From Ylistrum balloti (Eukaryota): a stretch of 64,000 nt of DNA. The stretch is taken from the NCBI RefSeq assembly GCF_031769215.1, contig NW_026782274.1, forward strand, positions 558,001 through 622,000, in the 5' to 3' direction. Positions 61,898 through 63,922 of this stretch are shown in pieces; the first letter of the stretch is position 1, and each line of letters starts with the position of its first letter. The position numbers and the translations under genes were made by a program. Below the pieces are notes generated by a model, which made no database searches, had not been told where the DNA came from, and saw only the letters and a list, made by a program, of their open reading frames with translations.

Positions 61898-63922
61898 ATG
61901 GCTTTCCCAGGTAATGTGACCACAAAATTCTACGATTACTTTTCAAGTTGTGTGTAATGATTATTGATCAAAAAGACAAGAATGAAGCAACACATTTTAA
62001 AAGTTTAAACATTGATGTGCCTTAATATGATTCATGTAGTGATTTAAATTGAAAAAGGGTGAACAAGTAACTTGTCTATTTTGCCAGGACTTGCAAGCCA
62101 CATCATGACAATTGATCGATTTGACAATCCGATTACCAATCAACACGAACTTAAGATATATCTAAGTCCGTGAAAACACCAGGATATTGCTTTTTATATT
62201 GTTTTATTTTCAAAACTCTTAAGTTCGAGTTGATCACCGTTCATTACTTGTATCTCGATATTAGCTACCCGGTAATCTGTTAAATTTAGTGTTGATGGTA
62301 CATGATATTGACTAGTTGGAAATGATGTTGATGGAAATATCAGATATCATTTATTTTAAATAGATGGACTTCAAACAAGACAAAAAATAGAATTCAATTG
62401 AAATTCATAATAAAATAATATTCTTGTCAATTCATTAGCATTTCGCACACTGTGTATATCAGTGCTAAATACACATCACACTGGTGATTCTTCTCTTGAA
62501 TGTGACTGTGTTAGTGAGTGAAACATTGTACAAAACTCCATTGTGTTTGTGTTATTAGAACTTCTTTTTTTCTATATATACTCACCAACCTGAAGAATTT
62601 GTTTCAGAATCAGTGGAGAATGCTTTGGCAAATGTCAGCTGCATGTATTAAATGACACTGCTTTATTTTTACCCTTTACAGAGACATCATACTGGATGAA
62701 GTTCTTTAAGGATGCTGGTATACCAGCTGGAGACTCTGCCAACTATGCAGTGACATTTACAGACAACAGAATCACACGGGACATGCTCCAGGACCTGACA
62801 AAGGACTACCTTAACTGTATGGGAATTTCAATCCTGGGCGATGTCATCAACATCCTCAAACATGCCAAGACAGTACACATACAGGTAAAAATATGTCTGT
62901 CCAGACAACTTGAATTTAGATACAGGTAAACATGATTTGTATACACTTGAAATTGAAGATATATGTGAAATTGACTTATAATAATGGGTTTTTTTTTGTA
63001 ATTTCTGAGATGTTTTAGTAAAATGTACTTTACACAACAGTAGGCTGTACATTGGTGATGTGAAAACCATATTAGTGCTTGTTATTGATAGAAATACAAT
63101 TCTTGGTGTATAGTATGTACAGTAAAGTCACTGTTATACTTGTAACTGAGGTCATTATTTATTTCAATGCCTCTGCTAGGAATCGAACCTGGGACCCCTG
63201 GCTTGCTGGTCTGACGCTCAACCAATCGAGCTAAAGAGAAGTTCTCTCTAGCCGAGTGGTATATTGTGGCTAGTATTTTACCAGGGTTACATACTTCCCC
63301 TCCGGGAAATAACTTGTCCTCAAGTTTCCAGATGTTACAGCGATGTTGGTAGGGTATGCCTAGTACTATTTCCGGGTCCATACATTGGCACGAATGTAAC
63401 AGCGGTCATTATTTATTTCAATGCCTCCACTAGGAATCGAACCCAGGACCCCTGGCTCACTAGTCTGATGCTCAACCAAATGAGCTAAAGAGAAGTTCTC
63501 TTTAGCTCAATTGGTGGAGCTTCAGACTAGCACATACATACATAAGTTGGGAGGGGGAACATAGTTGCCCCTGAATACACTAATACCACAAAGTATATGT
63601 AAATAAAGACTATGTCTATAATATGTATTACATCTTTCATACAAGGGAGAACTAAAATAAATAAAAGGATAAAGTCACACATATTCAAACAATCTGAATT
63701 AACATAAATAAGGAACTTATACCCATATAGCTCCAAGTTATACAATTCCTACATATCCAAGATGAGGCTGTACAATCAAACTTGGCAATTTGTTTTTATT
63801 TACTTATACCATTCTGTCTATAAACATTATGAAATTCAGTTTTTTCTTCTGTATTCCTCAGGAGCAAAGGGAGAAAACATTAAGGGGCTCACAGCCTTCA
63901 CCAACCCCAAGGAGATCCACAG
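61898..63922 (+). CDS. C19orf47: C19orf47 homologue (N-terminal SAM-like domain), 5' part only
   Basis: Exons 61898-61910, 62682-62884, 63862-63922; the gene continues past the window. [24 protein letters not shown]...ML.DL.K..L..MGI..LGD.I.ILKHAK matches the C19orf47 N-terminus. Confidence 0.9.
63141..63500 (-). mobile_element. Miniature LTR element (TRIM-like) with tRNA-derived LTRs
   Basis: Complete 151-bp LTR at 63141-63291 with TGTAAC..GTTACA ends, and a 5'-truncated second LTR at 63395-63500. The 103-bp internal region has a PBS-like TCGTGCC next to one LTR and a PPT GGAGGGGAAG next to the other. Each LTR contains a 73-nt tRNA-like segment with A and B boxes. Confidence 0.75.

What the first reader, a model, noticed from the sequence alone, without database searches (positions are those of the whole stretch)
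63141..63500. Miniature LTR retroelement whose LTRs are built around a tRNA (Pol III) cassette
Seen on the minus strand: truncated LTR (63500-63395), then TTCGTGCC (one mismatch from a TGGTGCC primer-binding site), a 103-bp non-coding core, the polypurine tract GGAGGGGAAG, and a complete 151-bp LTR with TGTAAC..GTTACA ends (63291-63141). Each LTR contains a 73-nt tRNA-like unit (63240-63168; 63494-63422) with A box TAGCTC(G/A)(A/T)TTGG, B box GGTTCGATTCC and a CTAGTGA loop resembling tRNA-Thr(AGT). Established analogy: plant Cassandra TRIMs carry 5S rRNA Pol III promoters in their LTRs. Inference: a SINE-like/TRIM hybrid, transcribed by Pol III and mobilised by a Gypsy-type partner, which may be undescribed as a non-autonomous family. 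Caveat: AGTA flanks both sides of the complete LTR, so it could instead be a solo LTR inserted with a 4-bp TSD next to another LTR-PBS fragment.
Basis: partly seen in the sequence, partly recalled or inferred. Interest (0 to 1): 0.78.

Follow-up and report, generated by a model that had tools for sequence, protein, structure and literature searches.

The report
Worn Helenus-type tRNA-bearing miniature LTR retrotransposon
This is an old, damaged copy of a tiny non-coding LTR retrotransposon whose repeats carry a relic of a threonine tRNA gene; the kind was described in 2024 as "Helenus", scallops included, so the find is real but not new.

Summary
On the minus strand, 63141-63291 is a complete 151-bp LTR (TGTAAC..GTTACA). 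63292-63394 is a 103-bp internal region with a decayed PBS and a polypurine tract. 63395-63506 is the 5' LTR from position 40 onward, 88% identical to the other.

Both LTRs contain a sub-threshold tRNA-like unit at exactly the stated coordinates.

In this 648-Mb genome the family has about 1,100 LTR 5' ends and about 370 internal regions. Copies occur as solo LTRs, 406-bp LTR-internal-LTR elements and three-LTR arrays. 20 of 26 complete units have perfect 4-bp target-site duplications.

The family PBS is an exact complement of the last 18 nt of the host tRNA-Lys(UUU).

Kojima (2024, PMC10886601) described such TRIMs as Helenus/TRIMp3. His supplement holds clearly homologous scallop families.

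This scan has already reached the same verdict on other pieces of this genome (s1-240631, s1-262772).

RNA polymerase III use remains untested, because no RNA run was available. No autonomous partner was found.

Two side observations may be new:
- a hairpin centred just 5' of the tRNA-like +1;
- rare palindromic derivatives, flanked by target-site duplications, that turn at that same point.

The parts
63141..63291 (-). Complete 3' LTR, 151 bp, TGTAAC..GTTACA termini
   Evidence: full-length matches at 93-96% to more than 40 genomic copies.
63168..63240 (-). tRNA-like unit of the 3' LTR (LTR positions 52-124). Box A is TAGCTCGATTGG and box B is GGTTCGATTCC. The anticodon loop is decayed (CCAGCAA).
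   Evidence: Rfam tRNA 14.6 bits, below the gathering score of 29; its fold is no better than shuffles (z -0.01).
63221..63260 (-). Natural LTR hairpin (LTR positions 32-71). The right arm is the tRNA-like acceptor 5' strand plus the start of box A. The loop lies just 5' of tRNA-like +1.
   Evidence: -21.8 kcal/mol, z -4.9; present in essentially all copies.
63292..63394 (-). Internal region, 103 bp (family form 104 bp)
   Evidence: 77-87% identical to the internal regions of other copies, always between two LTRs.
63376..63393 (-). Decayed primer-binding site TCGTGCCAATGTATGGAC, matching the family form TGGCGCCCATGTAGGGAC at 14 of 18 positions
   Evidence: One search shows the family PBS; host tRNA-Lys(UUU) genes end in ..GTCCCTACATGGGCG, so with CCA added the family PBS is complementary at 18 of 18 positions.
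63294..63303 (-). Polypurine tract GGAGGGGAAG (family form GGAGGGGGAG), followed by TA and then the 3' LTR
63395..63506 (-). 5' LTR lacking positions 1-39 (positions 40-151 present), 88% identical to the 3' LTR
63422..63494 (-). tRNA-like unit of the 5' LTR, anticodon loop CTAGTGA (AGT, Thr-like)
   Evidence: Rfam tRNA 21.9 bits, E 0.074; z -0.5.
63459..63532 (.). 74-nt near-perfect palindrome. An inverted copy of LTR positions about 52-88 (63496-63532) replaces the U3-side of the 5' LTR. It turns at LTR position 51.
   Evidence: I2: 35-nt arms, 91% complementary.: -50 kcal/mol, z -12.6. The Rfam miRNA-precursor hits only reflect this hairpin.
63137..63140 (-). AGTA flank 3' of the element. 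It may be one half of a TSD whose partner was lost with the 5' rearrangement, or it may be chance.
   Evidence: No AGTA is found at the 5' boundary.

Best explanation
The region is one old, rearranged copy of a Helenus-type TRIM. This is a 406-bp non-coding, non-autonomous LTR retrotransposon whose 151-bp LTRs contain a degenerate tRNA-Thr(AGT)-derived unit.

Shown here:
- The family transposes as an LTR element. It has TG..CA ends and 4-bp target-site duplications.
- It has a PBS exactly complementary to the host tRNA-Lys(UUU) 3' end, and a polypurine tract.
- It leaves solo LTRs and three-LTR arrays through LTR-LTR recombination.
- Some copies are young (LTR pairs up to 99.3% identical). The window copy is old: its LTR pair is 88% identical, 4 of 18 PBS positions are mutated, and its 5' LTR lacks positions 1-39, with an inverted duplication in their place.

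Inferred, not shown:
- The tRNA relic acts as an internal A/B-box RNA polymerase III promoter, with transcription starting about LTR position 51-52.
- The RNA runs through the terminator-free element into the 3' LTR, so R would be about positions 52-151.
- A Gypsy-type reverse transcriptase and integrase copy and insert it in trans.

The tRNA-like unit is not a working tRNA.
For: Anatomy in the window.

Family size: 2,382 first-look candidates. 1,099 LTR 5' termini with up to 2 mismatches, against 0 in the control. 381 matches to the PBS 15-mer, of which 11 are true tRNA genes.

Architectures among the fetched loci: 9 complete solo LTRs, 15 L-I-L, and 2 complete L-I-L-I-L. 20 of 26 have a perfect 4-bp TSD, where chance is 1 in 256 each.

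PBS: the internal region starts T+TGGCGCCCATGTAGGGAC in nearly all copies. Host tRNA-Lys(UUU) genes found by ARAGORN end in TTCGAGTCCCTACATGGGCG.

Age: LTR pair identity ranges from 0.85 to 0.993 in 14 canonical copies and is 0.884 in the window copy.

Published description: Kojima 2024 defines Helenus with these same features in pteriomorph bivalves. The LTR start, the tRNA-like block, the PBS and the last ~55 nt of the internal region are near-identical by eye to Helenus-3_MiYe, -1_PeMa and -2_ArIr. The LTR 3' tail resembles Helenus-1_MiYe, whose LTR is also 151 bp.

Compatible with Pol III read-through: no TTTT on the sense strand in any of 14 full copies or in the window copy, against 2-8 AAAA per full copy.
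Against: No transcript evidence. The only public run holding the stretch is DNA-like contigs.

The tRNA-like units are below Rfam's tRNA threshold. ARAGORN calls none in 25 loci, and they fold no better than shuffles. This argues against tRNA function but not against promoter function.

Absence of TTTT is weak support. About 1.5 are expected per 406 nt, and all copies share ancestry.

No autonomous partner was found. Other loci with the same PBS have no pol ORF.

The comparison with the published consensus sequences was made by eye, not by a computed alignment.
Confidence: 0.92

Rival explanations
1. One reading: a solo LTR (63141-63291) inserted with a 4-bp AGTA duplication next to an unrelated older LTR-PBS fragment, so the three parts are not one element.
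For: AGTA is found on both sides of the complete LTR.
Against: In every full copy the internal region ends ..GGAGGGGGAGTA directly before TGTAAC. The upstream AGTA is therefore the normal PPT-LTR junction. Both junctions (LTR|T+PBS and PPT|LTR) and the 103-bp spacing are canonical.
Confidence: 0.03
2. It is not an LTR element. Instead it is a 254-bp-period tandem repeat or satellite, or a tRNA-derived SINE or MITE spread by another mechanism.
For: Arrays of three LTRs and two internal regions exist. A 64-bp satellite-like array is built from LTR positions 1-64. The LTR has 6-bp inverted ends and a tRNA-like head.
Against: Solo, two-LTR and three-LTR units all start at TGTAAC, end at GTTACA and are flanked by 4-bp TSDs. 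A PBS perfectly complementary to the host tRNA-Lys, and a PPT, sit at the positions that reverse transcription requires. No A-rich tails were seen. Three-LTR arrays are a known by-product in TRIMs (PMC6934838, PMC10886601).
Confidence: 0.02
3. Same element, different engine. The tRNA relic is a passenger from an old SINE insertion into an LTR. The element is transcribed by RNA polymerase II or by read-through from host genes, as in ordinary TRIMs.
For: An AATAAA lies near the LTR 3' end in the window copy and in a subset of copies. The non-tRNA first 50 nt of the LTR are as conserved between species as the tRNA-like block (by eye). Several other published Helenus LTRs carry TTTT right after their tRNA-like unit (Helenus-2_CGi, Helenus-1_ArIr). 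That would stop Pol III inside the 5' LTR.
Against: A and B boxes are kept in the related published Helenus consensus sequences read here, while the anticodon stem has decayed in this family. [quoted passage not shown] There is no TTTT on the sense strand of this family. Rare palindromic derivatives turn exactly at tRNA-like +1, as expected if the RNA starts there.
Confidence: 0.35

Closest known systems
Helenus (TRIMp3) of pectinid bivalves: Helenus-3_MiYe, Helenus-1_MiYe, Helenus-1_PeMa, Helenus-2_ArIr (Kojima 2024, Biology 13:119, PMC10886601)
   Same: The architecture is the same: LTRs of 151-160 bp, an internal region of 105-115 bp, and 4-bp TSDs (Table S1). The LTR starts tgtaaccctggt.. 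and ends ..ctgttaca. It has the same tRNA-Thr-like block (..cttctctttagctcgat.ggttgagcgt.agactagtaagccag..ggttcgat.cc). The PBS is ttggcgccca(t/c)gtagggac, and the internal 3' end is ..cccctggaaactcgaggacgagtt.tttcctggagggggagta.
   Different: Here the LTR is 151 bp, the internal region 104 bp and the whole element 406 bp. The middle ~20 nt of the internal region and the last ~25 nt of the LTR differ from each published consensus. The exact 19-mer at the LTR start is absent from the paper's Data S1. This is therefore a sister or species-specific version, in a genome whose size (648.5 Mb, 1,372 contigs) does not, from my memory of their sizes, fit the three scallop assemblies used there. Identity was judged by eye.
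Cassandra (plant TRIM with 5S rRNA in its LTRs)
   Same: A non-autonomous TRIM whose LTRs carry a small-RNA-gene-derived internal Pol III promoter. It also forms tandem arrays and solo LTRs.
   Different: Cassandra has a 5S-derived unit, not a tRNA-derived one, and belongs to plants. It has a Pol III terminator inside the LTR giving an 18-bp R (as summarised in PMC10886601). The family here has no T-run in the LTR.
biv-TRIM (Satovic et al. 2019, PMC6934838)
   Same: A TRIM of bivalves with solo repeats and tandem arrays.
   Different: biv-TRIM has 202-218-bp repeats, a 77-80-bp internal domain, PPT GGGGAGA, no canonical PBS and a conserved TGATCCCAAAGGAC segment. None of these fits here. It is an unrelated family.
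tRNA-derived SINEs (SINE2)
   Same: A tRNA-like head with A and B boxes. Kojima proposes that a SINE2 insertion into an LTR was the origin of the tRNA-like unit.
   Different: SINEs have no LTRs, PBS or PPT. They end in A-rich or simple-repeat tails and have variable TSDs. Here the ends are TG..CA and the TSDs are a fixed 4 bp.

Membership tests
Helenus / TRIMp3 | Two short direct terminal repeats (LTRs) flanking a short non-coding internal region, total under 1 kb | tested here: met
   The family form is 151 + 104 + 151 = 406 bp in 14 canonical copies. The window copy is 112 (truncated) + 103 + 151 bp.
Helenus / TRIMp3 | tRNA-derived sequence with box A (TRGCY..YGG) and box B (GGTTC) inside the LTR | tested here: met
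   Rfam's tRNA model covers positions 1-71 at 63422-63494 (21.9 bits) and 63168-63240 (14.6 bits). Both are below the threshold of 29. Boxes TAGCTC..TTGG and GGTTCGATTCC are present, and the motif is found 3 times in the window against 0 in shuffles.
Helenus / TRIMp3 | PBS complementary to a tRNA, directly after the 5' LTR | tested here: met
   The family PBS TGGCGCCCATGTAGGGAC is complementary to the 3' end (+CCA) of host tRNA-Lys(UUU) genes at 18 of 18 positions. The window copy keeps 14 of 18.
Helenus / TRIMp3 | Polypurine tract directly before the 3' LTR | tested here: met
   GGAGGGGGAG+TA in the family and GGAGGGGAAG+TA in the window.
Helenus / TRIMp3 | 4-bp target-site duplications (animal Helenus) | tested here: met
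   20 of 26 complete units have a perfect 4-bp TSD, and 3 more match at 3 of 4. This is not checkable for the window copy because its 5' end is rearranged.
Helenus / TRIMp3 | Sequence homology to published Helenus consensus sequences | tested here: met
   Exact shared blocks were found in Data S1 (the PBS 18-mer and the internal 3' 15-mer). Collinear similarity was read by eye along the LTR and internal region. No computed alignment was made, because the published sequences could not be passed to the tools by reference.
Helenus / TRIMp3 | Transcription from the LTR's Pol III promoter | not testable with these tools
   No RNA run holds the stretch. This is also unvalidated in the literature. 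No later test was found in the library.
Helenus / TRIMp3 | Mobilised by an autonomous Gypsy-type element | tested here: inconclusive
   The 4-bp TSD and the tRNA-Lys PBS fit.
Cassandra | 5S rRNA-derived sequence in the LTR | tested here: not met
   There is no 5S match in the Rfam scan. The best small-RNA-gene match is tRNA.
biv-TRIM | 202-218-bp repeats, 77-80-bp internal domain with the conserved TGATCCCAAAGGAC, PPT GGGGAGA | tested here: not met
   The lengths here are 151 and 104 bp. The conserved segment is absent from the internal regions printed.
tRNA-derived SINE | A-rich or simple-repeat 3' tail, no terminal direct repeats, variable TSD | tested here: not met
   All complete units end in GTTACA and have fixed 4-bp TSDs.

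The most novel reading that the evidence does not exclude
The rare palindromic derivatives of this family have the form [inverted R-U5][R-U5], alone or followed by the internal region and a 3' LTR. Examples are the window at 63459-63532, and L046, L047 and L049. I propose they are integrated products of minus-strand strong-stop DNA that copied back on itself.

They are flanked by target-site duplications, so they formed before integration. Their turning point would then mark the 5' end of the template RNA. That point is LTR position 51, one base before tRNA-like +1, which is where an A/B-box Pol III promoter would start. This would be the first, indirect evidence that a Helenus element really is Pol III-driven.

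The hairpin centred at the same base recurs, with different but still complementary stems, in other published bivalve Helenus LTRs. It would then be either a functional U3/R-boundary structure or a fixed fossil of the same copy-back reaction.
Probability: 0.25. Interest if true: 0.45.

Novelty: already known. Interest (0 to 1): 0.15.

Why it matters
As a find it adds little. tRNA-bearing TRIMs (Helenus/TRIMp3) were described in 2024, with closely related scallop families, and this scan has already filed the same family from other pieces of this genome.

Its practical value is for annotation:
- About 1,100 LTRs can be mistaken for tRNA-like genes, SINEs or miRNA hairpins. The window palindrome scores 51 bits on a miRNA model.
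- The copies lie in and near genes. This one is next to a SAM-domain exon.

The open question is whether the tRNA relic really recruits RNA polymerase III. The palindromic derivatives and the hairpin at tRNA-like +1 give a concrete prediction for where the RNA should start, and 5'-end mapping could test it cheaply.

Tried and rejected
- ARAGORN on the window and on 25 family loci found no tRNA in any LTR. It did find the host tRNA-Lys genes.
- An Rfam E-value scan of 20 loci gave no tRNA match at E <= 1. It returned only hairpin-driven miRNA look-alikes. I rejected the miRNA-precursor hits in the window as artefacts of the palindrome.
- biv-TRIM (PMC6934838) was considered first and rejected on lengths and motifs.
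- Autonomous partner search:
  - L014/L031 is an LTR followed by a tRNA-Lys(CUU)-like PBS. It has no ORF of 150 aa or more in 10 kb.
  - L057 has no ORF and no repeats.
  - L056 and L064 carry the same PBS after an unrelated LTR end. They hold only a ~220-aa ORF with no Pfam hit, inside a 5.5-kb tandem repeat.
  - A PBS pattern designed to exclude Helenus gave 26 sites, but no more DNA could be fetched.
- Expression: no RNA run was found. Laying the one DNA-like run showed only that the insertion and both flanks are present, with no empty-site allele.
- Within-genome covariation in the hairpin was uninformative, because all copies share one stem.
- I built no consensus of the family and typed none of the published consensus sequences into tools. 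Cross-species identities are therefore by-eye estimates.

Full report
**What is in the window**

All coordinates below read on the minus strand.
- 63291-63141 is a 151-bp unit beginning TGTAAC and ending GTTACA.
- 63394-63292 is a 103-bp non-coding stretch.
- 63506-63395 repeats positions 40-151 of the 151-bp unit at 88% identity (family D1).

It scores 21.9 bits (E 0.074) at 63494-63422 and 14.6 bits at 63240-63168. Both are below the curated threshold of 29. ARAGORN calls nothing, and neither unit folds better than shuffled sequence (z -0.5 and -0.01).

The units are therefore tRNA-derived relics, not tRNA genes. They keep the D arm and box A (TAGCTC..TTGG) and the T arm and box B (GGTTCGATTCC). 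The anticodon loop CTAGTGA (CTAGTAA in most family copies) reads AGT, which is Thr.

Three corrections are needed.
- The 5' LTR reaches 63506, not 63500.
- Its missing first 39 nt are replaced by an inverted copy of its own tRNA 5' half. This gives a 74-nt palindrome at 63532-63459 (I2; -50 kcal/mol, z -12.6). The miRNA-precursor hits reflect only this palindrome.

**The family in this genome**

The window is G000:C417:558001-622000 of a 648.5-Mb assembly in 1,372 contigs.
- The 151-bp unit gave 2,382 first-look candidates. More than 40 scored copies match end to end at 93-96%.
- A 23-nt pattern for its 5' end has 1,099 matches with up to 2 mismatches, against 0 for the control.
- The 15-mer of the primer-binding site has 381 matches with up to 1 mismatch, against 4 for the control. 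Eleven of those are true tRNA genes.

Among the fetched loci the unit occurs in three forms: alone, as LTR-internal-LTR (406 bp), and as LTR-internal-LTR-internal-LTR. All three forms start at TGTAAC and end at GTTACA. 20 of 26 complete units are flanked by a perfect 4-bp duplication, and three more match at 3 of 4 positions. No copy has an A-rich or microsatellite tail.

The internal region of nearly all copies begins T+TGGCGCCCATGTAGGGAC and ends GGAGGGGGAGTA.

A search for the complementary 3' end joined to a T-loop found 11 loci. ARAGORN identifies tRNA-Lys(UUU) genes at them, ending TTCGAGTCCCTACATGGGCG. With CCA added, the family PBS is therefore complementary to the host tRNA-Lys(UUU) at 18 of 18 positions.

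LTR pairs within single elements are 85-99.3% identical, so part of the family is recent. The window copy is old: its LTR pair is 88% identical and 4 of 18 PBS positions are changed.

The AGTA before the complete LTR is the invariant end of the internal region in all copies. The three parts are therefore joined by canonical junctions and form one element. This is not a solo LTR lying beside an unrelated fragment. The AGTA after the element cannot be paired with anything, because the 5' end is rearranged.

**What it is**

I checked the source. [quoted passage not shown] Together with Cassandra and Ajax he calls them TRIMp3.

Fifty-one Helenus families come from five orders of pteriomorph bivalves. 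Animal Helenus makes 4-bp TSDs. Bivalve families use tRNA-Lys among other primers, and seven bivalve families have tRNA-Thr-like units.

His Data S1 contains the exact 18-nt PBS and the exact last 15 nt of the internal region of the family here, in Helenus-2_ArIr and Helenus-1_PeMa. Reading the printed consensus sequences by eye gives the following.
- Helenus-3_MiYe, -1_PeMa and -2_ArIr share three blocks with only scattered differences: the LTR from its first base through the tRNA-like block, the first ~33 nt of the internal region, and its last ~55 nt.
- The LTR 3' tail here resembles that of Helenus-1_MiYe, whose LTR is also 151 bp.
- Table S1 lists those families at 151-160 bp LTR, 105-115 bp internal region and 4-bp TSD. 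Here the values are 151, 104 and 4.
- The oyster families printed in the same file are different.

This is thus the same scallop-type Helenus lineage in another genome. The kind, its architecture and the Cassandra analogy are all published.

biv-TRIM of Satovic et al. 2019 is a different family in lengths, PPT and motifs.

**How it most likely works**

Shown here: integrase-type insertion (TG..CA ends, 4-bp TSD), tRNA-Lys-primed minus-strand synthesis (perfect PBS), a PPT for plus-strand priming, and LTR-LTR recombination products.

Inferred: transcription by RNA polymerase III from the A and B boxes, and mobilisation in trans by a Gypsy-type element.

Points for Pol III:
- The promoter boxes are kept although the tRNA fold is lost.
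- There is no TTTT on the sense strand in any of 14 full copies or in the window copy, against 2-8 AAAA. This is weak support, since about 1.5 TTTT are expected per element and the copies share ancestry.

Points against, or neutral:
- There are no RNA data.
- The first 50 nt of the LTR, which are not tRNA-like, are as conserved between species as the tRNA block.
- Some other published Helenus LTRs carry TTTT right after the tRNA-like unit.

No later paper testing this was found. No autonomous partner was identified.

**Side observations**

Every LTR has a 17-bp hairpin at positions 32-71. Its right arm is the tRNA-like acceptor 5' strand plus the start of box A. Its loop lies immediately 5' of tRNA-like +1 (-21.8 kcal/mol, z -4.9).

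By eye, other published bivalve Helenus LTRs have a hairpin at the same place with different but still complementary stems. The paper does not mention a hairpin. This was not tested formally.

The window's palindrome is not unique.
- L046 and L047 are [inverted R-U5][R-U5] units.
- L049 is such a unit followed by the internal region and a 3' LTR.
- L049 is flanked by a perfect TATG duplication. The other two have 3-of-4 matches.

These derivatives therefore formed before integration. Only six loci genome-wide have the perfect-arm core.

A copy-back of minus-strand strong-stop DNA would explain them. It would place the RNA 5' end at LTR position 51, the expected Pol III start. The natural inverted repeat has the same centre, and this is a serious confound. 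L049, which keeps the natural left arm, fits hairpin-induced switching better. I rate this reading at about one in four.

**Limits**

- I built no consensus of the family.
- The published consensus sequences were compared by eye, because they could not be passed to tools by reference.
- The loci examined are the best-matching copies, not a random sample.
- The species was not identified.

**Verdict**

The structural interpretation is right. The novelty claim is refuted by a 2024 description, and by earlier verdicts of this scan on the same genome. Interest is low.

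Noticed in passing
window 63221-63260 (minus strand), and every LTR copy in L002-L049: A 17-bp hairpin in the LTR (positions 32-71) pairs the tRNA-like acceptor 5' strand and the start of box A with upstream sequence. 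Its loop lies just 5' of tRNA-like +1 (z -4.9). By eye, published bivalve Helenus LTRs keep a hairpin at the same place with different complementary stems. The Helenus paper does not mention it.
   Followed up: partly
window 63459-63532; L046:1427-1612; L047:1464-1634; L049:1440-1895: Rare palindromic derivatives of the form [inverted R-U5][R-U5], turning at LTR position 51. They are flanked by TSDs: TATG/TATG in L049, and 3-of-4 matches in L046 and L047. Only 6 loci genome-wide have the perfect-arm core. They may be integrated copy-back strong-stop DNA.
   Followed up: partly
G000:C14:131310-131844 and G000:C109:92719-93125: Tandem arrays with a 64-bp period, built from LTR positions 1-64. 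This is a satellite-like expansion seeded by the LTR 5' part.
   Followed up: no
L056:900-2505 and L064 (G000:C854:20600-30500): An unrelated LTR end (..GTGTGACA) is followed by TT and the same tRNA-Lys(UUU) PBS. After it comes a ~220-aa ORF with no Pfam hit. On C854 the whole ~5.5-kb unit is tandemly repeated at least three times. No pol was seen.
   Followed up: partly
L014:1501-1700 / L031:1114-1300: A complete family LTR is followed directly by TTGGCGCCCAACGTG.., a tRNA-Lys(CUU)-type PBS, and by an internal sequence unlike the family's. No second LTR or long ORF lies within 10 kb.
   Followed up: partly
window 62702-62878 (+): An exon encoding a SAM_4 domain (Pfam PF18017, E 3.5e-24) ends about 260 bp from the element. 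The TRIM lies on the opposite strand, probably in an intron or flank of that gene.
   Followed up: partly
L053:1448-2145, L054:1448-2145, L051: Clusters of tRNA genes (tRNA-Lys-UUU with tRNA-Gln-CUG/UUG, tRNA-Arg-UCU) are repeated every ~3.6-8 kb on contigs C448 and C1175. L052 holds an ARAGORN-called suppressor-like tRNA (anticodon TTA).
   Followed up: no
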